From Octopus sinensis (Eukaryota): DNA of 64,000 bases. Below the pieces are notes generated by a model. That model saw only the letters and a list, made by a program, of their open reading frames with translations. It had not been told where the DNA came from and searched no databases. Positions 10,448-53,045 of the stretch are shown here, piece after piece; the stretch's first letter is position 1, and every line of letters starts with the position of its first letter. Where the stretch lies: positions 88,040,001 through 88,104,000 of the forward strand of contig NC_042999.1 in assembly GCF_006345805.1 (NCBI RefSeq), read 5' to 3'. The position numbers and the translations under genes are program-made.

Positions 10448-11731
10448 CGAGGGGCGTTCAATAAGTAATGCCTCTGACCCACTTCCCATAGCAGTAGAGC
10501 AACGAAACTTGGCACAGGTATTAGTCTTTTTCTACATAGGAACAACCCAGAGGTACGCATTTCTCCCATCGTTTGATGCAGTTCTGGAGACCGTTTTCGT
10601 AGAAGACCCCAGCTTGGTCCTCCAACCACGACGTGACTTCAGAAATCAAGGCTGCATCATCTGGGAAACGCTTTCCTTTCAAAAACAACTTCATGGCTGG
10701 GAAGAGGTGAAAATCAGAGGGTGCAAGGTCAGGAGAGTAGGGGGATGGGGGAATAGTTCATAGCCGCATGCCTATGCTTCTGATCTGGCGACACGCGAGT
10801 TGTGGACCGGAGCGTTGTCCTGCAGGAGGAGGATGCCTTTGCTGATCTTGCCCCGCCTCTTGGTTTCGATAGCTTCTCTTAATTTCCTCAAAAGTGAAAC
10901 ATGATAGGCTCCTGTAATTGTGGTACCCTTTGCCAGGAAATCTGTCATCACTACTCCGTCCTGGTCCCAGAAGACTGTGAGCATGACCTTGCCAGCAGAG
11001 GGCTGCACCCTTGCCTTCTTTGGAGGAGGTGAGTCATGGTGCTTCCACTGCATTGACTGGGCTTTGGTCTCTGGATCATAGTGATGGACCCAGGTCTCAT
11101 CCTGTGTAATCAGTCTTTTGAAACATTTTGACTCATCTTCTTGGCACATCCCTAAATTCTCGCTTCTGGAATTCTTGCGTTCTTGCTTCTGGAAAAGTGT
11201 GAGCAACCTGGAAATCCATCTGGCAGACACCTTTTGCATATGCAAATGGTCATGAATGATAGTTTCCACAGACCCGGTACTAATCTTGACCTCATGGGCT
11301 ATTTGGCGAATAGTTATGCGTCGATCTTCCAAAATGGCAGCCTCAACTTGACGGACAGATGCCTCATCAATGGCAGAAGGGGTGCGACCAGATCTGGGAG
11401 CTGTTTCCACAGAGTTCCAACCATGTTTGAATTCATGATGCCAGCGTTTTACAAGGTCATATGATGGGGCATCATCACCATAAGTTACTTTCATTTCATT
11501 AAAAGTCTCCTGTGGTGTGCGTCATTTCAAATACAAAAACCGGATCACTGTTCGACACTCAACAGGCTCCATTTCCCACCTGACTCATTTCAAACACCTG
11601 TAAATCAGAAACCACAATTAGTTCGGAGCTGTAATTCACCACTTAATCTATAGTGATATCAATAATTGCACATTCAGCTAGATCAAACAAAGGCAAGTGG
11701 GTCAGAGGCATTACTTATTGAACGCCCCTCG
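10448..11731 (-). mobile_element. Full-length mariner (DD34D) transposon, 1284 bp, perfect 37-bp TIRs, TA target duplication
   Basis: TIR cgaggggcgttcaataagtaatgcctctgacccactt at 10448-10484 and its exact reverse complement at 11695-11731; TA at 10446-10447 and 11732-11733. Confidence 0.97.
10521..11572 (-). pseudogene. Mariner transposase pseudogene (~350 codons; two nonsense codons, one 1-bp deletion)
   Basis: MEPVECRTVIRFLYLK*...TQDETW...QDNAPVH...*...HPP(fs)YSPDLAPSDFHLFP...SYVEKD*. There are 34 residues between the 2nd and 3rd Asp after repairing the frameshift in a C5 run. Confidence 0.95.
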
Positions 11732-24249: not shown

Positions 24250-25290
24250 GTGTGTTCAGCTGAATAAAATTACTGCTGTTATTTGTCAACAACAACTTCT
24301 GGCGGTATATATTTCCATGACATGAAAGAAGTTTATGGTGACGATGCACCATCATATGACGTAATCATGTACAGGCATCGCCAGTTCATATGTGCTCGGA
24401 CACCGGTGGAAACTGATCCTATTCCTGGACAACCACATTCCGCCATTTATGACGATACCATCCATAAAGTGCGAGCCGACATTTTGGAGGATCGCCGCAT
24501 AACTATTCGGCAACTAGCCCAATAAGTTAAATAAGTGTAGCGTCTGTGGAAAAAATCATTCACGACCATTTGCACATACGGAAGTTGTCTGTACGATGGA
24601 TTTCTCAGATGTTCACACCTTTTCAGAACCAGGATCAAGTCAATTGCTCCCAAACTCATTTGGCAATGTGCCAAGAAAACGAGGAGGACTTTTTCGATAA
24701 AATTATCACACAGAATGGAACATGGGTCCATCACTATGATCTTGAGATTAAAGTCCCGTTGAAGCAATGAAAGCATGCTAGCTCACCATCTCCAAAGAAG
24801 GCTCGTGTCCAACCTTCATCACACAAGGTAATGCTAATCGTCCTTTGGGAGCAGCTCGGAGTAGTGATGATGGATTTTCTGGCAAAGTGTACCACAATTA
24901 ACAGGGCATATTATACTTCTTTGCTACAGAAATTATGGGACTGCATCAAAGCAAGAACGCATGGCATGCTGACCAATGTCATCCGCCTCCTCCAAAACAA
25001 CGCCCCAGTTCACAATGCACATGTTAACAAGATGAAAGCATACTCCTGGGGTTATGAAATCCTTACTCAATGCCCCCACTCTCCCACCTCGCATTATCTG
25101 ACTTCTACCTCTTTCCAACCAAGAAGTCATTTTTTGAAGGAAAAGCACTTTCTATATGATGAACTTATTTCTGAGGTAATGTCTTGGCTCTAGACGCAAT
25201 CTACCGACTTCTACAGATGAGCCCTTCACAGCTGCATAAAGCAATGAGAGAGGTGTGTGATTATTTGGTGGCTATGTAGAGGACTAATAA
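24250..25290 (+). pseudogene. Heavily decayed mariner transposase, same subfamily as 10521-11572
   Basis: DMKEVYGDDAPSYD...ILEDRRITIRQ...IIHDHLH...WVHHYD...PKKARVQPS...LLQNNAPVHN; many stops and frameshifts; TIRs not recognised. Confidence 0.9.
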
Positions 25291-32823: not shown

Positions 32824-32932
32824 ATATATGTATACGTATATATATATATGTATACGTATATATATGTATGTGTACGCGCGTGTTAGTGTTTGTGCGTGTG
32901 ATTGTATGCGAGAGTTAGGAGGCGATATTTAG

Positions 32933-33960
32933 GAGATAATGGCTGTAAGGAATGGAACACTTCTAGGTGTGTTGTTTTATTGTTCATAGATATTTGCTTC
33001 GTTGTGTAGGCAGTCACTAATTTTGGTGAGTATAAATCCTTTTACGATGCCAAATGTGAGTGTAGTCTATGTATAACGTCTCATGATATAAAGTGCACTG
33101 CTTTCTTTCTGTCTTTCATTTCTTTTTTGCTTTATATAGTTTATTATGGAGAGATTAAGGGAACCATGAAGAATGAACTCTGGTATTGCAGTGCGACTAT
33201 ATTGTCTTAGAAAATCAGTGTGGCATGATGCGAGTTGTGTCGTTGCTGTTGCTTTTTGGTGATGCTGCCACTAATTATTGTGAAGTACTATTTTATTGTT
33301 AGTTTTATTCCTTATGTTGGGTACAAAGGTTTTCTAGCCTTTTTGTTTCCTTCGGTTTATTTCCTTGTCTAGTTTGGTGCTGAGTTATACTTCGGTTGTG
33401 TGCACTTTTGGTGTGTTGTGTTTGAAGTTGTATTTAATTTCTATGAACTTGTCTATTTCTGGTGTATAATTGGGGTTTTATTTTTATGTCTCTTTGTGCG
33501 TTATGATTTTTTGGATGTGTCTATAATTATTTAGTTAAGTATATGTGCTGCAGTGTTTATATTAGTGACTATTGGTGTTGTTGAGTTCATTTAATTGTGC
33601 TTTTTGAAGTTCATAGAACTGTTTTAGTTTTCTTCATTGATGAGATAATATGTTGTCCTAATAATTGATAGGTGATCTAGCAACGTTGGAGAATATTTTG
33701 TCAAGTTAGGTTAGGGGAGAAGAAGGTGATATCTGGGGAAAGTGTTATAGTAGTTGACTTCTTTAGGGATAACTCCGTGTTGCTGATGGATTGTTTAGAA
33801 TATGAAAGTAATTTATTTGCGGCGATATTGTTAGTTGTATTACATCTTTTGATACCCACAATATATAAAAATCAGGACATTTGTGTGCATTGATGTTTCT
33901 TGCAAATATAGTATTTGTAAAGTGGCGTAGTTAGAGTCTATAATCTGAAGAGACAGCTAG
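32933..33960 (-). mobile_element. Possible decayed Penelope-like 5' region
   Basis: Strong A/C strand skew on the minus strand and a QHGVIPK remnant; flanked by (TA)n tracts. Weak. Confidence 0.3.
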
Positions 33961-34194
33961 TGATGAAGCTAAATGACATTATATATATATATACATATGT
34001 ATACACATATTTATATATATATGCATGTATGTTTGTGTATATATATATGTATATGTATATATATAATATGCATGTATGTATATATATATATATATGTATA
34101 TGTATATATATATGTATATATATATATGTATATGTATATATATATATGTATATATATGTATATGTATATATATGTATACGTATGTATGTGTGTG

Positions 34195-34225
<31 letters not shown>

Positions 34226-34614
34226 ACGTCCATTGCAAAGGCCATATTTTATATTCACATTCTAATGTAAGTTTCTAAAATGTCTGTCTAGTATTATTTG
34301 AGTAAAATTTGAGTAAAATGCTCGCTGTAATATTTTCTAAGAGTATGTTGACTAAAGTGTTGATACATGGACATCGTATGTGATGATAAAAATTCTAGTT
34401 CATAAAAATGTTTCCATTACAGTTAATATCGTGGAATGCAGAATTTTTAATATTCCTTTGTCTTCCTTTTTGTGTATAAGGCACTTGTTAAATGTATAGT
34501 GCGTATGCTTCTGGCGTTGGAAACAGGATTAAATACAATAATTATAGATTTTATTTTTTGCTGTTGCTGTTTATCTAAATCTGTAAAGTTGTGAATTTTG
34601 ATTATTGGTGATAC

Positions 34615-34652
<38 letters not shown>

Positions 34653-35370
34653 CGCGTCGACATTGTATGACACTTATAGGTCTCACTTGTGGGTAACCAT
34701 TGGTTCTGTGAGCCAATAACGGCATTGGCACATGTCACATCCTTCGATAGAGATTCTAGTCAGTCTTGTTTACCTTTTGATGTATCATTATCAGTAATAT
34801 TTCATTGTGTATATGTAAGCATTTTCAGATGTTCCGCTAATATTTGAAGAAAATTTGATAGCAATTTTTTTCTTGGCGAGTGACCTAGTCGAATCATTGT
34901 CCTTAGTTTACCAATATAGATATTCTGGTAAGATAGTAGTTGTTGCTGCATAGTCTCAGGTCAGCCATTTCAAGCTAACATATAACTAAAAGCAGCCAAA
35001 ACTGATCACCCAGTCTACGTTTCTAGAACTACATTGCTCTGTGTAAACCTAAAGCCTAACTATAAAGTGTGGTCTTCGGAAACATAAGCAGATGGAATGA
35101 TTATCTAAATCGTCTGTCGTTGACTTTGGGTAAAATTATATTATAGGGACTAACATGATGAGAAAACAATTACTTAAGGGGAGAATTAATGCGGAAATCT
35201 TAGTATGGACTAGTAAAAGAAAAAATAACATTTTGCAGCATTAAAGATCATTAAATTCAAGAGCTTCTAAATAAACAGCTTCTAAATTTAAATGCTTCTA
35301 AATACATGAAGTAGTAACATACTTTGCTGATCATATCTAAGAAACTTATACAAAAATAATGGCAGATGTA

Positions 35371-35467
35371 GGACAAATGGTAGCTGAATGAATTGGAAAG
35401 GCTTGTCAAGAACATGAAATGCACAATATTCAAGTCGAAGTAAGGAGGTCTAGGGTCCGGTTGCGAA
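35371..35467 (+). pseudogene. rpsK: Bacterial ribosomal protein S11 fragment
   Basis: GQMVAE*IGKACQEHEMHNIQVEV(fs)GLGSGCE resembles S11 AQMxAExAxKAxxEHGxxxxxVxVKGPGxGRE. Confidence 0.7.
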
Positions 35468-35497
35468 TTGGAATAGATTAGGTCATGTTATGATAAA

Positions 35498-35602
35498 ACG
35501 CATGAAATTGTTCGAGAAAATATTACAATATCAGTTATGTATTCAGGTAGCATTAAAGGAACAGGAACAAGCTGTCCTAGTTTTGAAGATTAAATTCCTT
35601 TT
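35498..35602 (+). pseudogene. mnmG: Bacterial MnmG/GidA tRNA-modification enzyme fragment
   Basis: THEIVRENITISVMYSGSIKGTGTSCPSFED*IPF matches the conserved THExIxxNLxxSPMYSGxIxGxGPRYCPSIEDKxxRF motif. Confidence 0.8.
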
Positions 35603-35620
35603 GAATAAGTAGAGAATAAG

Positions 35621-35656
35621 ATAATTGGAACTTTAAAATATATTTCTCCTGAAATT
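35621..35656 (+). pseudogene. Ser/Thr protein kinase subdomain VIII-like shard (PrkC/PknB-type?)
   Basis: IIGTLKYISPEI fits GTxxYx[AS]PE, but is only 12 codons. Confidence 0.4.
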
Positions 35657-35807
35657 ACTCACAAGTTCTTTCATCTCACCCTGGTTTTGTGCATCTACAT
35701 TTTCAACTGATATTTGCCTTGCAAAATTACTCCATTTATATCGGATTTGATAATTTACCGCGTGCTTATAAATGTAATGGTATATAAAAAGGAGTAATGT
35801 TTATTGC

Positions 35808-36199
35808 CGTTACTACCATTTTAACTCCAGGAGGATGCCTCCAGATGGTTATTCAATGCAGTCTGCACCCTGTATATATTGCATGCAGGTAGCAAACCAC
35901 TACCACTTCCAGTGTTGGAACCATCAGACCGTACGGTTTCAAGCTATTTCTACTTATCCTCAGTGGTGGATACTCGTCCGCTAAAGATAGCAATAGTTCA
36001 TTCCAGCTCACAATATATAGAAAAATAAGAATCCACAACTGAAGATGAACACAAATAGCTCGAAACCGTACGGTTTGGTGGTCCTGTTGCTGGAAAATGG
36101 TAGGGATTCGCTTCTCTGTATGCAATATATCCAGGGTGGAAACTGCATCGAATAACCAGCTGGAGGAGGCATCCTCTTGGGGTTAAAATGGTATTAACG
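35808..36199. mobile_element. Foldback MITE-like element (~390 bp, ~170-bp imperfect arms)
   Basis: cgttactaccattttaactccaggaggatgcc...gtacggtttcaagctattt vs the reverse complement of the right half cgttaataccattttaaccccaagaggatgcc...gtacggtttcgagctattt. TSD ambiguous (TA or TTAA/TTAC). Confidence 0.75.
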
Positions 36200-36635
36200 C
36201 TACTTATGGAGCAGTCATGTTGAAGTGGTGATAAACATTACTTCTCAGTACAGTTACTGCTTTCATCTCTTATAGAGGTTTTCTAACTATCTAATTCGCT
36301 CATTGGTAAATAAAAACATCGATATACTAGAAAACTTAGCATTAATGCTGCTGCTGCTTTTGATTTTGAACGATCATATCCTATGTAATAAAAAATTGAA
36401 GCACATGCTTGAATCAGCAGAATTTTCGTATAATAACTTATTCATGCGCTTCTTCAATTTGTTCACTTGAAGATAACGCTAAAAAAAATGCACCCTTTAT
36501 GATCTAGCATGAAATGCTACCAAAAACTAAAAATTTGTATGAATATCAGTTCACGATTTGTTAATGAATTAGATATTCGGGCTGTATCACATTCTGATGC
36601 TGCAGCATATTTTCACCGAAATTAAGCGGAAACAG

Positions 36636-36777
36636 TTATTCTGGCACTGTTAAATAAGTTAATAAACGAATAACAATTGATACCTTTAAGGTAAAATAAA
36701 TTCTTTTGACAATATGTTTTGAATATATCGACACTTGTTGTTTTTTTAAGATTTTCTCTTTTTACCTTCTGCATTCA
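36636..36777 (-). pseudogene. secY: Bacterial SecY N-terminal fragment
   Basis: KHIVKRIYFTLKVSIVIRLLTYLTVPE* matches SecY TM1 (KxxxxRIxFTLxxLIxxRxxxxIxVP); lies immediately after the rplO stop as in the spc operon. Confidence 0.75.
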
Positions 36778-36780
36778 CTA

Positions 36781-36940
36781 TTACACAACCTCTACTTTTC
36801 CAGCTGCTGTTGCAGTTGCTTCTTTTGCAGAGTTTGAAATATTATAAATTTTTCATATTTAAACTCTCAGTCATTTTACGACTATCTCAAATTTTGAGAA
36901 AAGTTTTATCAAAATGTATTATTTGTATGTTTCTAATGTC
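36781..36940 (-). pseudogene. rplO: Bacterial ribosomal protein L15, C-terminal half
   Basis: ...ISNSAKEATATAAGKVEVV* matches the L15 end (xSxxAKEAIExAGGKVEVI). Confidence 0.85.
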
Positions 36941-37313
36941 TGCAAAAGCTACTGATGTACCTGATGTTATTAAGAAACCAATCAAAGGGGCTAAAAATTC
37001 ATTAGTAAGAGTACCACTTGTAGGAACACCAGCTGCTTATGAAATAATGGGATGTTTTGGAGCAGGTCAGGAATGATTATATCATTTATAAAGGGCCTGG
37101 AGTTATTACTGAAGGATGTGTTCGTGCTGTAACTGAACACGCTGGATTAGCAGATGTTTATGCAACATCATTAGGCTCAATTATACCAATTGATATGATT
37201 AGGGCTACAAAAGAAGAATTGAAATCATAAAGTATAGTTGACCAAGTTGCTAGATGAAGTCGTAAAGCAACTGAAGAATTATAAGAATAGTAGAAGTATG
37301 GGAGAATGAACTA
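36940..37313 (+). pseudogene. rpsE: Inverted duplicate of the 3' part of the rpsE pseudogene, inserted into rplO
   Basis: 374 bp, reverse complement of 37579-37952 with 3 mismatches. Confidence 0.93.
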
Positions 37314-37578
37314 TTATGATTAATATATTAAATATTTCATTTTTTAAATCTTTCAAATTAAAGATTGTATAGCATTTTGTATTAATGTGTGTAAATCCCT
37401 CTTTTGGAATTTCTTGGAAAATGGAAGTTTACCCCCCCCCCTTCAAATCAAGGGCGTACTCCTCCACCGGTACGAACATTTTGATCTTTCTTCACTTTAC
37501 CTGAAGTTTTTCCTCGTCCTAATCTGTTGCAGGAATGACGAGAACCTTCTGTATATTTTAAATCATTCTCTTATATTC
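37314..37578 (-). pseudogene. rplO: Bacterial ribosomal protein L15, N-terminal half
   Basis: [43 protein letters not shown](fs, G10 run)*TSIFQEIPKEGFTHINTKCYTIFNLKDL. Confidence 0.92.
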
Positions 37579-37607
37579 TAGTTCATTCTCCCATACTTCT
37601 ACTATTC

Positions 37608-38229
37608 TTATAATTCTTCAGTTGCTTTACGACTTCATCTAGCAATTTGGTCAACTATACTTTATGATTTCAATTCTTCTTTTGTAGCCCTAATCATATT
37701 AATTGGTATAATTGAGCCTAATGATGTTGCATAAACATCTGCTAATCCAGCGTGTTCAGTTACAGCACGAACACATCCTTCAGTAATAACTCCAGGCCCT
37801 TTATAAATGATATAATCATTCCTGACCTGCTCCAAAACATCCCATTATTTCATAAGCAGCTGGTGTTCCTTCAAGTGGTACTCTTACTAATGAATTTTTA
37901 GCCCCTTTGATTGGTTTCTTAATAACATCAGGTACATCAGTAGCTTTTGCAGTTACTAATCCAACACGTGCATTTTTATCACCAATGATTACGACTGCGG
38001 CAAATCTGAAATGACATTCATATTTTGTCACTCTTGTTATGCAATTGTTACAATTGTTTCAGAAAACTCATTACCAGCTTGATTGCAATTAAATGAAATT
38101 TGTTCAGTTAATGATGTTGTTTTAGGTTCATCTTGGTTATTATTGTTCTCTTTTTTCTTTTTTGCTTGCTCTTGAACAGTCGATATCAAATATACAATTT
38201 TTTTTCTGTCACATGTTTCTATTATTCAT
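37608..38229 (-). pseudogene. rpsE: Bacterial ribosomal protein S5 with a long N-terminal extension
   Basis: NEFSETIVTI(fs)RVTKYECHFRFAAVVIIGDKNARVGLVTAKATDVPDVIKK...VRVPLEGT...EIMGCFGAG(fs)[39 protein letters not shown]...EEL*. Confidence 0.95.
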
Positions 38230-38234
38230 TCTGA

Positions 38235-38520
38235 TTATAATTTTATACCATCTTCACGAGCTGATTCAAAAATGAATACTTGTTCATGATAAAACTAACC
38301 ACTGCAATCAAATACAATATTATGAATTTCGTTTAAGTTGAGCATTTTCAGCAATATCTGCGCCAGTGCTTCTTTAACAGCAGCAATAATTGAAGTTGAG
38401 TTTGATCTATTAATTGTGAATAACAATGAACACTTAATTTGTTCACATTTAATCTTGGGAGTAGTAAAGTACCTGCAATTTTATTTTAAAGACAGTAGCG
38501 TCTTTTGTTTTACAGTTAAT
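38235..38520 (-). pseudogene. rplR: Bacterial ribosomal protein L18
   Basis: KRRYCL*NKIAGTLLLPRLNVNKLSVHCYSQLID...IHNIVFDCSG*FYHEQV...ESAREDGIKL* matches L18 (SGTxxRPRLNV...YAQIID...VVFDRGGYxYHG...AARExGLKF). Confidence 0.88.
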
Positions 38521-38774
38521 AGAACATAAAGAATAATAATGTAAAAAATAGACATGGCTTAAGATATATAGAATCGAAGAACAAAATACCAGTTATAATG
38601 TGTGGGAATTATAAGTCTCTAAAGAAAATTATTTTTTTATAAATATTACGGTTTTAATTTTGAAAGGTAATTACTTTATATTTAATTTGTTAAGCTTTTA
38701 TAGAATACAACACAAGTGTTCCTGACTTATTTGCATCTTTCTTTCTCTTTCTCCCTCTCTCTCTTACATATATT

Positions 38775-39112
<338 letters not shown>

Positions 39113-41665
39113 CAATTTAATTATAGAAGAGTATGACTTTCCTACTTATGAATTAAAGTTAAAATGAAATCTACTTTGTCTGAATTAATAAATTCATTGT
39201 AACAGTAATGAACTATTGTCTTTGCGACAGCATCATATCGTAAATATTCTTAATTGTGATAAGTAATATCACAAGTTCTTTTAAATGGCAAGATTTTATA
39301 GTTATTTCCATCATTTGTTGTATTGACTGCTGTGCTACGAAAGTTTACATTTTGTTTGAAGTGTAGAATGGCATCGGAACATGTATTCTCAGTACTCTCC
39401 TGTATATTTCTGTATATGTTAAATAAACTAGGGGTGAAAATAGCAATCAGAATCTAACACTGGTTGTTCTTCCATCTTTATAATTGGTGGAGTGTAATCT
39501 AGTCCAGTATTTAATGCTACTGACGCTACTGATATTGCAGCTGTAATCTGTCTGTGTATGCTTTGTTTTTCATATTTACGTGACCTAAGTGGGGAATGTG
39601 GTCACAGCTTTTATGATGATGATGTTATAGTAGTTTCGAGCTGGTGTAGATGTATTTGGGCGATTTGTTGGGCGTAAGATTTTCAAGCAGCGTTAGGAGA
39701 GTGATGCTTGACATGTGTTGCGGCAACAAGCAGTACTTATCGAATGGTTGGAGAATTTTGATGAAGAGTTACTAAGGTAATATTACTATGAGGAAGTAAT
39801 CTGGTAAAATCTTGAGTTTGGTCGAAATCTGGTCTAATTAAGAAAATTATGTGAAGCATTTTGTATTTACAGAGAGATGTTGGTAGTTAATTATGCAAAA
39901 TAAAGGAATGAGTACTTAAATTATGATCAAACGAGCAATACTTTTAGAGCAGATGCTTTTATAGTATCTGTAGAAAAATAAAGGAAGGGGGACTAATTTG
40001 CAATAATCCACTTGTGAATAATGTTAGTGACTCTCCAGTTTAAAAGCTGGGTTTCTACTGCCACACAAGGAGCCTATCTGTCTTTGTCTGCTGAGACTTA
40101 TGAATATATGCATGTATGTATGTGCGTGTATATGTGTCTGGAGGAGATATACTTTCGACTTTTCTCATATGTATGTAGGATTCTAAAATGGAGTGTTTCT
40201 TCTTCAAGTGTATGGTATGAATTGCATTTGATCAGAGAATTTCGATAAATGATTTACTGATTCGCTCCATCATTATATTATTATATGTAGACGAATGCTT
40301 CCTTCTTCAACAACAGCATAATTCCTTCTTCAAAGGGAATTTTTATTAGCATACTTCTAAGAACTTATCATTAAAACATCCTTAATGTATAACAAAAGGA
40401 TAATTGACGTCACTATTATTCAGTCGATCTAACGAGTGAAGCTCTACATCGTCGCCCCGCCAATAACTAAATTTCTCCCTAAACCAGCGCCAACGTCTTA
40501 AATTGGGTGGGTTATATTCGATACTGTCGCTTCTAGATATTTATAAAAGAATGAGATGGTTACGGCAGTATAACTTTAGATCATAATTCACATCGCTCAG
40601 ACTCAGTGAGGTCAAAGACACTCAGCAACAGGAAATGCGACTTCTATCAGGCCTATTGTACTCGTAACTAGAAAAACTGAATTTGCTGCTTTTTTACTAA
40701 TCTGTAATATCGGGTCTTTAATATTCACATGCATACGTATTCATGCTGCGTTATTATCTACCTATATCCTTGATGTTATATGAAATAATATTGTAAAATT
40801 TATTGCTGAGCAACTTTACAAAGTGTGCTGCTGTATCAAGTGGGAATAATGTCTTTATAAGATATCAGCTTTTCTTAGACTACTGGCTATATGCAATGCG
40901 CATCAGCGTATGCATGTTTGCATACGCGTCTGTAGGAGCGTAACTCATAGTTAATTGCATGTCTAGGGATTCTCAGAAAGTAGTTACCCTTTGCTGATCA
41001 AGCTATTCTCTTAGAGGAGGATGTTTCTTTGAAATAAAAATAACCACACTATGATTATGCACCTTGTAAATCATTCATGTTGTGCTTAATTATCTTCAGT
41101 AATGGTGGAAAATTCCCATCCTGGAATTTTGCACTTTTAAGAACTAAGGATAAAATGGAATGAATTGTATAGTTCTTATGAGATACGTTCCCTTAGAAGA
41201 AAGTTATGCAGTTTGTTTTCTTTTTATGAGGGAAATTTGGCATTACGATATTAGAGATAATAGCACTAGTTTGATTTCATCGTAAAAGATTTAAATGTAT
41301 GGCATAATTCTCATGAAATCAGAGTAAAAAATATATGGTAGAATTTAGTGAGTCAGAGATATGAGGTTCGAGAATATTAACCACATTTCTAGCTATTCAT
41401 AGAAATCATTGTCCATTACATTACAATTGTAGAGATATAAAACATTACGAAATGGTAAATGCATGCATAGGGAGTGTATACGCGCGCGTGTCCTGTGTTT
41501 ATATTTGTGTGCTTGTGAATAAAAATGAAATTAGATATTAGAAATTCAAGTTAGACTTTTGCACGTTTAACGTTTCCTTCACGGTATTTTAAGGTTAAAC
41601 AGCAATTTTGTAGTACAGTAAATAAGGTAATTCCTAAAATACGGTTGGAGGTTGGTAAAACTTAC

Positions 41666-41901
41666 CTGTATTAAGTGCACTAGTGTCAACAAATCTGCCA
41701 GCTTACAAGCCTGAAGAAAACATTTCAAACCTAACTTCTTTGAAAAAATTCGTACAAAGTACAAGTTGACCGTTGGGTATAAATCAACGAAAATAGAACA
41801 TTTTTCTGTTGCCTTAGGCCAAAATTTGGTTGAATAGAATCCAATTTCCATTGTAATAAGAACGTTAGATAAAAGTATAATCAATTTGAAATCTTGCTTT
41901 T
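41666..41901 (-). CDS. Candidate internal exon (236 bp) of an unknown host gene
   Basis: Pyrimidine-rich acceptor ...ttgtttttccttacctcaacag|, donor cag|gtaagt, and one open frame (KQDFKL...VHLIQ); no recognisable homology. Confidence 0.2.
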
Positions 41902-43625
41902 CTGTTGAGGTAAGGAAAAACAACAAACGACGGAAATAAAAGTGTACCATTAATACTGATAACGGCGTCAGCATGACATGGTGGCGATGACAGCGAGAAC
42001 GCAGTTAGGAGTGTTGCTGCTTATTGAGTCAGTTTGCATGGTGATGTTTATGGCTATCGTCATAGTTTAAAAAGCTGCATAGTTTGAAGGATGGAGGTTT
42101 CTATTAAAAATAGAGAGCTTTCACTACCAAATTTCCTTGCTTTTGATTTGATTACATCGATTTTCCAAATCCCATTCAGATTTTTTCATTATTAATTAAA
42201 ATTATCAAGAACTACTAAGAATATTTTTCGATGAATCTACTTTCCACAAAATTCTTTATGACCTCAATCATCTAATCTATTTTCGATTTTTTTTTCAGCA
42301 GGACAGAAATCAATCAGAACAGGCAAAGAAACTGAAAACTAACAAATGCTGTAAATCTTTCAGAAAATGGATGCATATCGCATTACTGCCATTGAAGATT
42401 CTACAGAAATTTAAAAAGAAAACAAATAGAGGAAATATTTCATTTGTTCTTTTCTCTGGAGTCAGATGAAAGCAATAGAAGACGCATTCATCTAAACGAA
42501 CAATTTTCATCTTTTGCCGAGTAATTTTAGCCCAAGAGATTAGAAGAAAAATTCCCAGTTCTGAAAAATTAAACAAGTTATCCAATATTGAAACAAGCAC
42601 AGACGTAATAACAGCCATTCATAACAATAAAGCCAAGTTATTTAGAAGGTAATTTAATTTCTATCTATCCTCGTTTCATAAGTCTCCTAGATGTTATGTT
42701 AACTGCAGTAAGTTGCTAGACTGGAATTTTTGTGGTAATTTCGTCGATGATGTTTCAGTTAATAGATTTAATCTTTTTAATATAAGTTGATCTGTTGCCT
42801 TGGTATTGCTGATAATATAGCATAATTAATGTTAGTGCATATGTATAAGATGTTATATATTTTTGAATGTTGACGCTGATGTTGTTATTATAATATTGCC
42901 AATGTTAGTAGATGTATAACACATGATACACGTTGTCAATGACATTCTTGATAATAATACAGCAACGTTAATGTTAGTTCTCGAATATCTGATGATATTT
43001 ACTCTTGTTACTTTATAAGTTCATTGCCTATATTACTTCCCTATGTTCATGCTGCAGTTACCATTGCTAATGTTGTTTTTGTTGTTGCTGTTATTATTAT
43101 TATTATTATTATTATATTATTATTATTATTATAATTATTATTAATATTATTATTCTAATTATTATTATTATTAACACATTAACACTATTACGCGAGCTGG
43201 TTGAATTCTTAACTCTTCAATAAAAGAAGCATCAGTTAAACAATGGGATTGATATAATCGACTAGTTTTCTTTCCCTTTTAAATTACATGGTTTGAGCCT
43301 ATAGAAAAAATTACTATTAGGTGGTGTTATATGGGTTTCTTTCTTCTATGCAGCTGAAGGTAGTGAAACGAAGTTGCAGAAAGCATTTGTATTCATATTT
43401 GTCCGGATAATCTGGATTTTTACGTGGAGTGTCCCATATCACCTTTGTGGTTCAACCCTAACTTGATGATATCTTCTTGTTATTTTTGTTGTTGCTCTTC
43501 TTGCATTATAGTTCTTTATTGCTATAGGTTTATTTTCAATCTTTTACACAGTGTAGTTACCAAATTCTACTGTATCCTCGTACTGTAAATACTCAACGTC
43601 TCGGAATCTTGTAGGTAATAGGATA

Positions 43626-44918
43626 GTGGGCAGGCTAAAAAGTTCATAGGCTGACTATGATGGTGTGTCGCTAGAGTTGTGAAATCTTGCATGCATTCAT
43701 TTTAATTCTTATTATTATTAACTGCATTGCTTCGTTCCAGATAAACATATACCAAACTGTTTAAAGAAGACTTTAAATGTAACTAGTAGCAACATGTGTT
43801 GAAAATGGACAATATTTGGCACCGTGGTGTTATCCAGTACCTGCAGAAAAAAGATATAGCCCCCAATGACATTCATGTTCACATAGTTGATATATTAGAG
43901 GATGATGTTTCAGCTTTATCAACAATGCAAAAGTGGGAGCTGAATTTGGGAGGGTAAGGGGAAGTTTTAAAGACGATCCAATGTCTGGACATTCTGCAAC
44001 TGACACCATTGCGGAAAACATTGATTGTGTTCACCACAAGCTGATGGATGACAGGCGAGTGACTATAAATCAAATAGCCAATGCTGCTAACATGCCTTAT
44101 GTGAGAATTACGAATATTCAGCGAGATGAGCTTTGCCTGACAAAGGTTTCTACTCAGTGGGTGCCACGTCTTCTGACTCCTGATAAAAAGTGCATTAAGC
44201 TAATCAAATCACGGAAAAATCTGACATTGTTTGAGGCAGATTCTGCTAGTTTACATGGATGTTTCCAAATCCAGGATGATTGTAGGCTGCATCACTTTGA
44301 ACCAACGACAAAGAGGCAATTCATGCGGTGAAAACACTCCACCTTAGTTGCTCCAAAGAAGGCTATGATCGTTTCATTTCATCTATAGGGAAGGCGATGG
44401 CCACTCATTCTCGAGATGCAAAAGGCACCGAGTTTATTGACTACTTCAAAAGGGCCACACCTTCAATGGAAAGGGAGTACTATTCCAACTTGCTGAGGTA
44501 GTTACGAACGTTTATCAAAACCAAACACCCAGGAAAACCGACAGGAGGGTCTTTTTTTAAGAAGACAATATTCTAATGCACAAACCATTGGTTCCAATGG
44601 CCGCTGTGCGTTTTATGGCTTTAAAATGATTGATAACATTCCTTATTCTTCTGATTTGACCTCTTCTGGCTATCATCTGTTACCTAAACTGAAACAAAAA
44701 AAAGCAACACTTGGCTGGGAAGCAGTATCTCAGTGATAATGACGTCATATCTGCTGTTGGTGACTTATCAGACTAACAGGATGAAAGCCCGTCGCCAATG
44801 GGATCCAAGCAAAGCAACAACAATGGAAGGTATGTGTGCACCGCAAGAGAAATATTCTTCACTTGGTCACATTCCATAAGTATCTTAGTCAGCCTATGAA
44901 CTTTTCAGCCGTCCCTCG
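43626..44918 (+). mobile_element. Decayed mariner of a second subfamily with imperfect TIRs
   Basis: Left ta-gtgggcaggctaaaaagttcataggctgacta vs right (rc) tacgagggacggctgaaaagttcataggctgacta. Transposase remnants MDDRRVTINQIA...WVPRLLTP and a PYSSDL-like motif. Confidence 0.88.
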
Positions 44919-50100: not shown

Positions 50101-53045
50101 CATTCAGTAGTTTTATTTTTATAGCGTGCTTTCACTTCACTACCGAGCGCAGCTCTATGTGCCTTAGGTATGTGCTCTGATTTGTTGTGATGCTCTGATG
50201 GTTATTGCATGGAAAGTGTTCTGCGTAGGATGTGTGCAGTGCCTAGTAGTGCAATTTTCTGTATGTTATATGTGTTTGTAAGTCCTGATATTTTTGTTAT
50301 GTATTTGTCTGAATACTTTTTTATCATGCCTAATGCACCTACTATGAGAGGAATTGTTTCTATTTTTAGATTCCACATTCTGGTTACCTCTATTTCTAGG
50401 TCTTTGTATTTTGAAAGTTTCTCCATTTCTTTTAGAGTCACGTTGTCATCTGCCGGTATTGATACATCAATTAGAAAGCATTTTTTTTCTTCATGATCTC
50501 TGACAACTATATCTGGTCTGTTGGCCTTAATTTCTCTATCTGTGTGTATCGGCATATCCCAGAGTATGGTTGCTTTCTCGTTTTCTGTAACCTTTTCTGG
50601 TGTGTGCCTATACCATCTTTTTTCTGTTTTTATTCCATAATGTTGGCATAGCTTCCAGTGTATGTAGGTTCCAACTCTGTCATGTCTGTGAATATATTCC
50701 TTCTTAGCCAGGACTGGGCAGCCAGAGATAATATGATTTATTGTTTCTTGTCCATCTCCACATATTCTGCAGTTACTTGTTATATTTCTTTTCATTACAT
50801 GTCTTTGGTAATTTCTGGTGGGGAGGCTTTGGTCTTGTGCTGCAATTAAAAATCCCTCTGTCTCTGCTTTGAGTCCTGAGCTTCTCAACTATTGCTGGGA
50901 TTTTTCTTTGTCTATTTCTTTTGCGTTTAGTTTAGTCCAGTATTTACCATGAAGGGGCTTTTCTTGCCATCGTTTTATCATTGTTCGTTGCTGTTCTGTT
51001 TTTAGTTTGGATTTCATTTGTTTTATAGCTTTTGTTGTTTCTTCATCTTCTTCTTCTTCTTCATATTTATTAGGTGGTATGATTTCTTGCTTGTATTTGT
51101 CAGCTTCCTTAAATACTGAGAACAGTTTTTTGTTTTGCTCGTGTTTTGCCGCTATTTGTATCAGTTTTCCTTCCTTCTGAAGTAGATATTTTTGCAGTCC
51201 TATGGTGGATATTTTATAGTAGTTTTCGAGTTGTATAAGGCCTCTACCACTTTCTATACGTTGTATATATAGTCTTTCTATGTCAGATTTTGGGTGATGC
51301 ATCCTAGATCCTGTCAGTATTTTTCTTGTTTTCCAATCTATTTTGGTCAGTTCATTTCGTGTCCAGTTAAGGATATTGTAGCTGTAACTTATAACTGGGA
51401 CAGCTAAAGTGTTAATACCTATTATCTTGTTTTTAGCATTGAGCTCTGTTTTTAGTATTGATCTAACTCGTCTATAATATTCTTTTTTTATTTTCTTTTT
51501 CATTTGTGTGTGTTGTGTGTTATCTAGTTCATGGATTCCTAAGTATTTGTAAGTTTGGCTTTGGTCTAATTATTTTATTTCATTGGTTTTATCTAGTGTG
51601 ATGTTGCTACTCTTAACTAGTTTTCCTCTTTTCAGGGTTACTTTGGCGCATTTTTCTAATCCAAATTTCATATCTATTTCTTTGGTAAATCCATGAACTG
51701 TCTTTAATAGTGTTTCCAGCTGTTTGTAATTTGCAGAGTATAGTTTTAGGTCATCCATATATAAAAGGTGGCTGATCGTTTTGCCGTAACATTTATATCC
51801 GCATCCAGTTCTATTTAACATATCAGATAGAGGTGACAGTGCCAAGCAGAAAAGGAGTAGAGAGAGAGTGTCTCCCTGGAATATTCCTCTTCTAATGGGG
51901 TTGGCTTTGGTTTTCATGAGTCCCTCTTTTGTTTGGAGCTGTAGCACGGTTTGCCATTTATTCATAGAGTGCCTTATGAATGTTATAAGTGTTGGTGCTA
52001 CTTTGTTAATGGTTAGTGTTTCGAGGATCCATGTGTGGGGGATGCTATCAAACGCCTTTTTTGTAATCGATCCAGGCCATACTGAGACCTTTCTTATTTC
52101 TGTGGCTGTCTTCCGTTATGGCTTTATTAATCATTAGTTGATCTTTACAGCCATATGAGCCTTTGCGGCATCCTTTCTGCTCTTCTGGAAACAGGTTGTT
52201 TTCGTCCAGGTGCTTGTTCAACCTTTGCGTTATCACTGCAGTAAATGCCTTGTATATTGTAGGGAGACATGTTATTGGTCTGTAGTTTTCTGGTTTTGCT
52301 GTCTCATTTGATTTGGGAATTAAGATGGTTTTCCCCTTCGTGAGTCATTCAGGCATTGTCTCTGGCTCTGCTAGCATGCTGTTAAAGTTTTCAGCCAGCT
52401 TTTTGTGCATTACTGTTAGATATTTCAACCAGAAGTTGGGGATCTTGTCATGCCCAGGTGCCTTCCAGTTGCTTAGTCTTTGCAGTGCCTGGATGACCTC
52501 TTCAGTTGTTTTGGGGGTCCAAAGTTGCTCAGATGCTGAGTTTGTTGTTTTCATACTTCTTTTTTTTGTTTGTTCGTTCGCCGACCATATTTATCTCCAG
52601 AATTCTTCCACTTCTTCTGCCGTTGGTGTTGCAATGACTTCTATTTTATTTTTGCCAAGTTCTTGGTAGAACTTTTTGGGGTTGCAGTTGAACTTTTTGT
52701 TTTGTTCAAAGAAGCGCTGGCGTTTCTCGTACCGGCGGATCCTTTGTGCTTTGGCAAGGATATCTTGCTTCAGCTTTTCTTTTATCTCAGGTATATTTTT
52801 TTCTGTGATGTTATATTTGCGGAGTATTTTTGTTTTCTTTTTGTTGCTCAGTAGCGTTGATTGTCTACTGATTTCATCAAGAATCGACAGACCTTTTCTC
52901 ATTTTTTGTATTTTGTTTTGGATGTTATTTATCCACAGGGTTTGTTTGGGTGGTGGTACTCCTGTTTGGATGGGTTTGAGTGAGTATCTTTTGTGGCTGC
53001 AGTGGCTGCTGCGTATACTAAGTCATTTAGCTTAGTGATATCGCT
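50101..53045 (-). mobile_element. Dong/R4-clade LINE, 5'-truncated (~2.9 kb), RT + CCHC + RLE, inserted in (TAA)n
   Basis: NWKAPGHDKI, NYRPITCLP, WIDYKK, RGIFQGD, HLLYMDDLKLY (RT); CRICGDGQETINHIISGC (CCHC); RPDIVV...IDVSIP...KLSKYKDL (RLE). (ATT)n on both sides (50027-50100, 53046-53316); several stops and frameshifts. Confidence 0.96.

What the first reader, a model, noticed from the sequence alone, without database searches (positions are those of the whole stretch)
35371..35656. Shattered-and-religated donor genome: ~100-bp shards of unlinked genes fused end to end
Seen: an rpsK shard (35371-35467), an mnmG shard (35498-35602) and a kinase-like shard (35621-35656) lie on the plus strand within 290 bp, opposite in orientation to the spc block. 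Known: these genes are not normally adjacent in bacterial chromosomes. Inference: fragmented bacterial DNA was concatenated by end joining at one break, like complex NUMT insertions.
Basis: partly seen in the sequence, partly recalled or inferred. Interest (0 to 1): 0.8.

Follow-up and report, generated by a model that had tools for sequence, protein, structure and literature searches.

The report
Scrambled Spiroplasma-like DNA fossil in animal genome
A 3.1-kb stretch of this animal chromosome is a dead, rearranged patchwork of gene fragments from a Spiroplasma-like bacterium; this is a real but already familiar kind of bacterium-to-animal DNA transfer with no sign of function.

Summary
The rpsK (uS11) fragment at 35374-35445 and the mnmG fragment at 35492-35596 are real. 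They lie on the + strand, at most 46 nt apart, and are inverted relative to a minus-strand rplR-rpsE-rplO-secY' block at 36642-38506. The 'kinase-like' fragment (35621-35656) has no support.

It abuts secY codon ~55-66. A 514-nt insert that gave no bacterial hit, carrying a 392-nt foldback, splits it.

Each piece that could be traced points to Mollicutes. S5 is 61% identical to Spiroplasma, S11 is 67% identical to S. melliferum, and the best solved-structure match to nrdF is Mesoplasma florum. The donor of mnmG could not be resolved.

All pieces carry stops and frameshifts. LINE and mariner remains and microsatellites surround them, so this is an old pseudogenised transfer, not contamination.

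rpsK is not unlinked: in S. melliferum it lies 2.9 kb downstream of the secY break, in the same direction. Its inversion here proves rearrangement. Ligation of fragments at one break is the best reading, but a larger insert followed by deletion and inversion is not excluded. It is a new member of a known kind, of modest interest.

The parts
35374..35445 (+). rpsK (uS11) pseudogene fragment, aa ~64-87. It may extend to 35362-35485 (aa ~62-99) across a 1-nt frameshift, with an in-frame TGA at 35389 and a TAG at 35474.
   Evidence: tblastn against S. melliferum S11: 67% identity, E 2.8e-5. The top PDB hits are uS11 at residues 62-95. The tail is not significant alone.
35492..35596 (+). mnmG (gidA) pseudogene fragment, aa ~255-289, covering the region of the GxGPRYCPSIEDK motif. 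It has a one-codon deletion and a TAA at the Lys of EDK.
   Evidence: NCBIfam TIGR00136 E 1.3e-6. Pfam GIDA E 0.0067. PDB MnmG E 5e-5. 53-58% identity to Mycoplasmatales MnmG. No continuation downstream.
35597..35659 (.). Unassigned 63-nt gap between the 3' ends of the mnmG and nrdF fragments.
   Evidence: No significant family or structure hit in any frame.
35660..35789 (-). nrdF fragment B, aa ~192-248 of the class Ib/Ie RNR beta subunit, with an internal deletion of about 50 nt and a frameshift.
   Evidence: tblastn with M. florum NrdF 118-249: FYIPLHL*ARGKLSN (67%) plus ...QGEMKELV, joint E 0.008 over the whole window. Joining it to fragment A raises the NrdF profile score from 12.8 to 19.1 bits.
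35790..36303 (.). 514-nt GC-richer insert (40-43% GC) that splits nrdF. It gave no bacterial family hit and carries a 392-nt foldback (35808-36199, terminal inverted arms 91% complementary). A 13-nt imperfect direct repeat tggta[a/t]ataaaaa flanks it (35778-35790 and 36304-36316). It is probably a host transposable element with a target-site duplication.
   Evidence: the repeat finder, composition and direct reading of the sequence. Both copies of the repeat encode nrdF FY(L/I)P. There is no other copy in the window.
36304..36591 (-). nrdF fragment A, aa ~92-195, with two frameshifts and in-frame stops. The Trp codon of HEWVI reads TAA.
   Evidence: NCBIfam NF010572 E 5.3e-7. The best PDB hit is 6gp2, which I recall to be Mesoplasma florum class Ie NrdF, at E 1.2e-5. 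tblastn E 3e-11.
36642..36752 (-). secY 5' fragment, aa 19-55, possibly extending to ~aa 66 at ~36610. The gene stops there.
   Evidence: tblastn against S. melliferum SecY: 46% identity, E 5.9e-5.
36784..36938 (-). rplO (L15) 3' part, codons 95-145. It is collinear and ungapped with S. melliferum L15.
   Evidence: tblastn aa 123-145, E 0.037. I counted 51 codons for 51 residues by hand on the translation.
36939..37313 (+). Inverted duplicate of the rpsE 3' half plus the rpsE-rplO spacer, inserted between rplO codons 94 and 95.
   Evidence: Inverted repeat 36940-37313 / 37579-37952, 374 nt, 99%. S5 aa 87-201 lies on the + strand.
37310..37567 (-). rplO (L15) 5' part, aa 4-94, with several stops.
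   Evidence: tblastn 46% identity, E 9e-16.
37611..38040 (-). rpsE (S5) pseudogene, aa 58-201, with one frameshift and one stop.
   Evidence: Pfam S5_N E 1.1e-10 and S5_C E 1.4e-9. Best homologues are Spiroplasma spp. at 61% identity, E 8e-33.
38241..38506 (-). rplR (L18) pseudogene, aa 15-120. This is the right-hand end of the bacterial DNA.
   Evidence: tblastn E 2e-8. Pfam L18p E 0.0017. Nothing bacterial in 38401-43380.

Best explanation
Window 35.36-38.51 kb is a non-functional fossil of DNA from a Spiroplasma-like Mollicute, presumably a symbiont with access to the germline, integrated into an animal chromosome.

It is a mosaic of at least four pieces that are not contiguous in the donor:
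- a collinear 1.5-kb rplR-rpsE-rplO-secY' operon piece;
- an nrdF piece of at least 0.43 kb, joined to secY codon ~55-66;
- a 105-nt mnmG piece;
- a 72-126-nt rpsK piece.

The last two are joined head to tail and inverted relative to the rest.

The most likely origin (inferred, not shown) is that fragments of bacterial DNA were ligated to each other and into one chromosomal double-strand break by end joining, as in complex NUMT/NUPT insertions. Neutral decay followed, leaving stops, frameshifts and small deletions in every piece. Two later local events also occurred: a 0.5-kb foldback element inserted into nrdF, and a 374-nt inverted duplication of the rpsE 3' half landed inside rplO.

Nothing here is expected to encode a protein.
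For: Bacterial, Mollicute-like origin:
- S5 is 61% identical to Spiroplasma spp.; 19 of the 20 hits are S5 proteins at 59-61% identity, every named one a Spiroplasma, and the remaining hit, a Williamsoniiplasma, is at 56%.
- L18, S5, L15 and SecY follow the S. melliferum order and spacing.
- S11 is 67% identical to S. melliferum.
- The best solved-structure match to nrdF is 6gp2, recalled as Mesoplasma florum NrdF.

Mosaic of unlinked genes:
- Neither mnmG nor nrdF lies within 10 kb either side of rpsE in S. melliferum.
- The junctions are tight: S11|mnmG at most 46 nt, mnmG|nrdF at most 63 nt, secY|nrdF about 20-50 nt.

Rearrangement is certain: rpsK is co-directional with secY and 2.9 kb downstream of it in the donor-type operon, but it is inverted here.

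Pseudogene state: every piece has stops or frameshifts.

Host context:
- LINE reverse-transcriptase and mariner ORFs and dense microsatellites.
- No bacterial hits in the flanks that were scanned: 32930-33970, 34270-35373 and 38507-43380.

Precedent:
- Spiroplasma/Mycoplasma were donors of 37 HGT loci in ants (PMC13320244).
- Mosaic organelle insertions formed by NHEJ are described in PMC6215612 and PMC9630118.
Against: - A single ligation event is not demonstrated. No donor genome close enough (the best is 61% amino-acid identity) was available to define breakpoints or microhomology.
- The inverted duplication in rpsE/rplO shows that this locus rearranged locally after, or independently of, integration. 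The rpsK-mnmG inversion could therefore also be secondary.
- rpsK lies on the side of secY where the operon order predicts it. That fits a longer original insert that later lost secY-adk-infA-rpmJ-rpsM.
- The donor of the mnmG piece is unresolved: 53-58% identity to Mycoplasmatales, about 55% to Aquifex (my count on the alignment), 62-64% to unnamed metagenomic fragments.
- No TGA-at-Trp signature of the Mollicute genetic code could be shown.
- The host species and read-level support for the assembly are unknown.
Confidence: 0.5

Rival explanations
1. A much larger, initially collinear piece of the Mollicute genome, possibly hundreds of kb, was inserted. It was later whittled down by many internal deletions plus at least one inversion, leaving small remnants side by side.
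For: - rpsK lies on the downstream side of secY, as in the operon.
- The locus demonstrably underwent later rearrangements: the 99% inverted duplication, a ~50-nt internal deletion in nrdF and a 6-codon deletion in L15.
- From my own knowledge, large Wolbachia inserts are known to decay in this way.
Against: - Three or more very large deletions would be needed, each leaving only 0.1-0.4-kb remnants. mnmG and nrdF are each more than 10 kb from the spc operon in S. melliferum.
- No other bacterial remnants were found within 2.4 kb to the left or 4.9 kb to the right.
Confidence: 0.33
2. Several independent insertions of bacterial DNA occurred at different times and happened to land in, or be drawn to, the same fragile site.
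For: The pieces come from at least three donor regions and lie in two orientations. The donor of the mnmG piece is unresolved.
Against: The junctions are direct, with no host sequence between S11|mnmG or secY|nrdF. The density of disabling mutations is similar in all pieces, about 1 per 25-40 codons by my count. Repeated hits within 3 kb of a large genome are improbable.
Confidence: 0.1
3. An artefact: bacterial contaminant reads were mis-assembled into a host contig, or the matches arose by chance.
For: No read data could be examined. The S11 fragment fails the family-library scans.
Against: - The genes are riddled with stops and frameshifts and are only 40-67% identical to any known bacterium. 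They do not come from a living contaminant.
- A GC-richer foldback insert that gave no bacterial hit sits inside nrdF.
- E-values range from 1e-6 to 1e-33 for five independent genes clustered within 3 kb.
Confidence: 0.03

Closest known systems
Endosymbiont-to-host nuclear transfers: Wolbachia 'nuwts' in insects, nematodes and isopods, and the Spiroplasma/Mycoplasma-derived HGT loci reported in ants (PMC13320244)
   Same: Bacterial housekeeping genes sit inside an invertebrate chromosome. They are pseudogenised, fragmented, rearranged and locally duplicated, and the donor is of a germline-associated symbiont type.
   Different: The donor is a Spiroplasma-like Mollicute rather than Wolbachia. 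The host looks like a non-insect, possibly marine, invertebrate: the closest named relatives of its LINE element are echinoderms, corals and shrimp at ~60% identity. The insert is very small (3.1 kb) yet samples at least three donor regions.
Complex or mosaic NUMT/NUPT insertions (PMC6215612, PMC9630118)
   Same: Non-contiguous donor fragments lie in mixed orientation, joined almost directly at a single nuclear site, and then decay neutrally.
   Different: The donor is a free bacterial genome of ~1-2 Mb rather than an organelle genome. Junction microhomology and filler bases could not be examined here.
S10-spc-alpha ribosomal protein operon cluster of Mollicutes and Firmicutes
   Same: The order and spacing rplR-rpsE-rplO-secY match S. 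melliferum. rpsK belongs to the same cluster.
   Different: The block is truncated at L18 aa 15 and SecY aa ~55-66. adk, infA, rpmJ and rpsM are missing. rpsK is inverted. rplO is split by an inverted copy of the rpsE 3' half.

Membership tests
uS11 / rpsK | Significant sequence similarity to S11 at the homologous position | tested here: met
   tblastn against S. melliferum S11 aa 64-87: 67% identity, E 2.8e-5 over the whole window. PDB uS11 chains rank on top at residues 62-95 but are weak (E 0.08-1.3). Pfam and NCBIfam are silent.
MnmG / GidA | Match to the family profile across the GxGPRYCPSIEDK region | tested here: met
   TIGR00136 E 1.3e-6 at positions 243-278 of 616. PDB MnmG E 5e-5. 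Only 35 of ~615 codons are present.
A GTxxYxxPE-like motif alone is not sufficient. | tested here: not met
   No Pkinase or other significant hit for 35597-35820 in any frame.
NrdF (class Ib/Ie ribonucleotide reductase beta subunit) | Match to the family profile or to solved NrdF structures | tested here: met
   NF010572 E 5.3e-7. 6gp2 E 1.2e-5. tblastn E 3e-11 for fragment A and 0.008 for fragment B.
Bacterium-to-animal lateral transfer fossil | Sequence of bacterial origin flanked on both sides by host-type sequence on one contig | tested here: met
   Bacterial hits occur only in 35374-38506. LINE, mariner and microsatellite sequence lies around them, and nothing bacterial was found in the flanks that were scanned. 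Read-level validation was not possible.
Bacterium-to-animal lateral transfer fossil | Loss of coding capacity (pseudogenisation) | tested here: met
   Stops and frameshifts occur in S5, L15, L18, S11, mnmG and nrdF.
Complex (mosaic) end-joined insertion, NUMT-like | Two or more fragments that are non-contiguous in the donor and directly adjacent in the recipient | tested here: met
   S11|mnmG at most 46 nt; secY|nrdF about 20-50 nt; mnmG|nrdF at most 63 nt. mnmG and nrdF are absent from 10 kb either side of rpsE in S. melliferum.
Complex (mosaic) end-joined insertion, NUMT-like | All fragments come from one donor and were joined in a single event, with NHEJ signatures such as microhomology or filler bases at the junctions | not testable with these tools
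   The closest donor is 61% identical at the protein level. No Spiroplasma mnmG or nrdF locus could be fetched. No orthologous host loci were available.
Mollicute (genetic code 4) donor | In-frame TGA at conserved Trp positions | tested here: inconclusive
   The in-frame TGAs in S5, L15 and S11 align to Leu, Gly and Ala, not Trp. The one conserved Trp covered (NrdF HEWVI) reads TAA, one step from TGA.

The most novel reading that the evidence does not exclude
The block records one germline repair event in which the genome of a lysed Spiroplasma-like symbiont was shattered, and at least four random pieces of 0.1-1.5 kb were ligated into a single break in a non-insect, possibly marine, invertebrate. 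That would be a bacterial analogue of complex NUMTs. The near-perfect 374-nt hairpin derived from rpsE may also be transcribed into small RNAs.
Probability: 0.3. Interest if true: 0.45.

Novelty: new member of a known kind. Interest (0 to 1): 0.33.

Why it matters
It adds a Mollicute-derived case to a record of bacterium-to-animal DNA transfer that Wolbachia dominates. It shows a very small insert sampling several distant donor regions, the pattern expected if end joining captures fragmented bacterial DNA in the same way as organelle DNA. It also marks a past, probably germline, association between this host lineage and a Spiroplasma-like symbiont. For annotation, it warns that these ribosomal-protein, mnmG and nrdF matches are neither contamination nor genes. 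There is no sign of function, so its value is as a historical and mechanistic marker.

Tried and rejected
I used X-masked code-4 translations instead.
2. Finding a Spiroplasma MnmG failed four ways:
   - the word-index homology search found no candidates;
   - a genome-contig scan with the fragment found nothing;
   - an exhaustive phmmer search returned only four short unnamed MnmG fragments and one low-complexity false hit;
   - a DNA pattern aimed at code-4 mnmG returned Mycoplasmatales and Zinderia but no Spiroplasma.
   The mnmG donor therefore remains unresolved.
3. The idea that the 'kinase-like' stretch is a continuation of mnmG (an LEPEG-like motif) was rejected: alignment scores were at noise level.
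4. A possible L6 fragment at 35645-35770 (tblastn E 0.014 locally, 0.7 window-wide) was rejected. The stretch reads better as nrdF fragment B, and the PDB uL6 hit aligned in a different register.
5. My first nrdF 'TGA = Trp' observation was a wrong-frame artefact, shown, and is withdrawn.
6. A composite nrdF peptide that scored E 2e-4 counted the same nucleotides twice in two frames. The corrected path alone gave no hit. Support for fragment B therefore rests and on the 6-bit gain.
7. There is no nucleotide similarity between the two sequences flanking the foldback beyond the 13-nt repeat.
8. Exact look-ups of window ORFs in public collections found nothing. The host species could not be named: the accessions of the closest LINE copies were not found in the literature.

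Full report
**Context**

The window is about 33% GC. It is full of (TA)n, (TG)n and (AAT)n microsatellites and carries LINE-type reverse-transcriptase and mariner-type transposase ORFs. No tRNA or Rfam family was found.

A near-intact LINE ORF at 50202-50885 has its closest relatives in unnamed assemblies: 89% in a Logan SRA contig and 82% in GCA_024449705.1. Its closest named relatives are echinoderm, coral and shrimp proteins at about 60%. The window is therefore animal chromosomal DNA, but the species could not be named.

(a) rpsK. I fetched the S10-spc-alpha cluster of Spiroplasma melliferum and ran its 33 proteins against the window with genetic code 4.
- S11 aa 64-87 aligns to 35374-35445 on the + strand: QMVAEWIGKACQEHEMHNIQVEVR against QMVAEAAGKASQEHGMSSVQVEVK. 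Identity is 67% and E is 2.8e-5.
- Solved uS11 chains are the top PDB matches at the same residues, but each is weak on its own.
- Pfam and NCBIfam do not see the fragment.
- After a 1-nt frameshift the sequence reads GGLGSGCELE*IRS, which resembles KGPGPGRDAAVRS. That tail is not significant by itself (p~0.12).

(b) mnmG. The + strand at 35492-35596 reads DKTHEIVRENITISVMYSGSIKGTGTSCPSFED*I.
- It matches NCBIfam TIGR00136 at E 1.3e-6, Pfam GIDA at E 0.0067 and solved MnmG structures at E 5e-5.
- It is 53-58% identical to Mycoplasmatales MnmG proteins fetched with a DNA pattern.
- It covers only about 35 of ~615 codons. No other mnmG piece is in the window, and the homology stops at 35596.

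(c) The 'kinase-like' stretch at 35621-35656 gives nothing in any library. It should be dropped.

**The surroundings**

On the minus strand the same tblastn run shows:
- L18 aa 15-120 at 38506-38241;
- S5 aa 58-201 at 38040-37611;
- L15 aa 4-94 at 37567-37310;
- L15 aa 123-145 at 36852-36784;
- SecY aa 19-55 at 36752-36642.

The order and spacing match the Spiroplasma operon. Pfam confirms S5 and L18.

A database-wide search with the S5 fragment returns S5 proteins at 59-61% identity, all the named ones from Spiroplasma. A Williamsoniiplasma follows at 56%.

L15 is interrupted between codons 94 and 95 by an inverted copy of the rpsE 3' half plus spacer. This is the repeat 36940-37313 / 37579-37952: 374 nt, 99% identical, 265 nt between the arms. 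With that copy removed, the remaining 51 codons line up without gaps against L15 95-145.

A six-frame NCBIfam scan of 34801-36700 found class Ib ribonucleotide reductase beta (NrdF) on the minus strand at about 36591-36298, E 5.3e-7. The best solved-structure match is 6gp2 (E 1.2e-5), which I recall from my own knowledge to be the Mesoplasma florum class Ie protein, another Mollicute of the Entomoplasmatales.

I read M. florum residues 118-249 off the printed alignments and used them as a tblastn query. This gives:
- fragment A at 36538-36304, E 3e-11, with two frameshifts;
- fragment B at 35789-35660, reading FYIPLHL*ARGKLSN ... QGEMKELV, joint E 0.008.

Joining B to A raises the NrdF profile score by 6 bits over the sequence actually adjacent to A.

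Between A and B lie 514 nt of GC-richer sequence (35790-36303) that gave no bacterial family hit. It holds a 392-nt foldback and is bracketed by a 13-nt direct repeat, identical at 12 of 13 positions, that encodes the same nrdF codons FY(L/I)P. The simplest reading is that a host transposable element inserted into an already resident nrdF fragment.

nrdF starts within about 20-50 nt of the point where secY stops. Its other end lies 63 nt from the 3' end of the mnmG fragment, tail to tail.

**Extent of the bacterial DNA**

NCBIfam scans of 32930-33970, 34270-34810 and 38401-43380 found nothing bacterial. The bacterial DNA is therefore confined to about 35.36-38.51 kb.

**What it is**

Five bacterial genes (six counting rplO) cluster in 3.1 kb. 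Each is truncated and each carries stops or frameshifts. None is more than 67% identical to any known bacterium.

This rules out chance and contamination by a living bacterium. The block is an old, pseudogenised lateral transfer from a Spiroplasma-like Mollicute.

The mosaic nature is real. mnmG and nrdF are not within 10 kb either side of rpsE in S. melliferum, yet partial copies of them sit directly against partial secY and rpsK.

rpsK, however, is not unlinked. In the donor-type operon it lies 2.9 kb downstream of the secY breakpoint and in the same direction. Here it is on the expected side of secY but inverted, and adk, infA, rpmJ and rpsM are missing. That inversion proves at least one rearrangement beyond simple deletion.

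**How it arose (inferred)**

This mechanism is documented for complex and mosaic organelle insertions (PMC6215612 and PMC9630118). It explains tight joins between very small pieces from distant donor regions, with no other remnants nearby.

I cannot exclude a longer collinear insert that was later reduced by large deletions and an inversion. The locus clearly kept rearranging: it shows an inverted duplication, a TE insertion and small internal deletions, and rpsK sits where the operon order would put it.

Separating the two models needs a close donor genome and orthologous host loci. Neither could be obtained here.

**Donor unity**

The spc block, S11 and nrdF point to Mollicutes. The mnmG fragment has the Firmicute/Mollicute-type IKGTG motif before the PRYCPS region, but it is too short to place: 53-58% identity to Mycoplasmatales, about 55% to Aquifex by my count on the alignment, and 62-64% to unnamed metagenomic fragments.

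No TGA-for-Trp signature could be shown. An early impression of one was a wrong-frame artefact.

**Novelty**

Endosymbiont DNA fossils in invertebrate genomes are well known. Spiroplasma/Mycoplasma donors have been reported for 37 loci in ants (PMC13320244). Mosaic end-joined insertions are well described for organelle DNA.

This is a new member of a known kind. It may be notable for the host lineage and for how many donor regions are sampled in so small an insert. It is non-functional and of modest interest.

Noticed in passing
window 36940-37313 and 37579-37952: A 374-nt inverted duplication, 99% identical, of the rpsE 3' half plus the rpsE-rplO spacer. The copy is inserted exactly between rplO codons 94 and 95, so rplO codons 1-94 form the 265-nt loop of a near-perfect hairpin. 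The three mismatches imply a recent duplication or ongoing gene conversion in an otherwise old pseudogene block.
   Followed up: partly
window 35790-36303 (foldback 35808-36199): A GC-richer 514-nt insert with 35-nt terminal inverted arms (91% complementary) and longer internal inverted arms splits the nrdF fragment. It is flanked by a 13-nt direct repeat identical at 12 of 13 positions. It looks like a MITE-type host element with a target-site duplication, but there is no second copy in the window.
   Followed up: partly
Its best solved-structure match is 6gp2, recalled as Mesoplasma florum NrdF. The conserved Trp codon of HEWVI reads TAA, one step from TGA.
   Followed up: yes
window 50202-51965 (minus strand): Adjacent long ORFs of a LINE-type retrotransposon (reverse transcriptase and zf-RVT region), nearly intact. 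They are 89% and 82% identical to copies in a Logan SRA assembly (SRR7158634) and in GCA_024449705.1, and about 60% identical to echinoderm, coral and shrimp proteins. This is probably a recently active element and the best clue to the host.
   Followed up: partly
window 10772-11494, 24831-25193, 43933-44331: Mariner/SETMAR-like transposase ORF fragments (DDE region and HTH region) in several copies, identified by eye from the translations.
   Followed up: no
window 28.4-29.7 kb, 31.2-31.4 kb, 32.6-32.9 kb, 33.97-34.27 kb, 38.93-39.17 kb, 52.9-53.4 kb and elsewhere: An unusually high density of long (TA)n/(TG)n and (AAT)n/(ATT)n microsatellites, several of which bracket the bacterial block.
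   Followed up: no
protein P0142 (SRR5699024-derived, 161 aa; not in the window): The best exhaustive-search match to the mnmG fragment is itself a short MnmG fragment of Firmicute/Mollicute type with an internal duplication of about 45 residues. It could be another decayed, transferred mnmG copy in some other organism.
   Followed up: no
window 35230-35300: Three copies of a short motif (gcttctaaat) within about 50 nt, just left of the rpsK fragment, in sequence of unassigned origin. The left border of the insert could not be fixed more closely than 35.1-35.37 kb.
   Followed up: no
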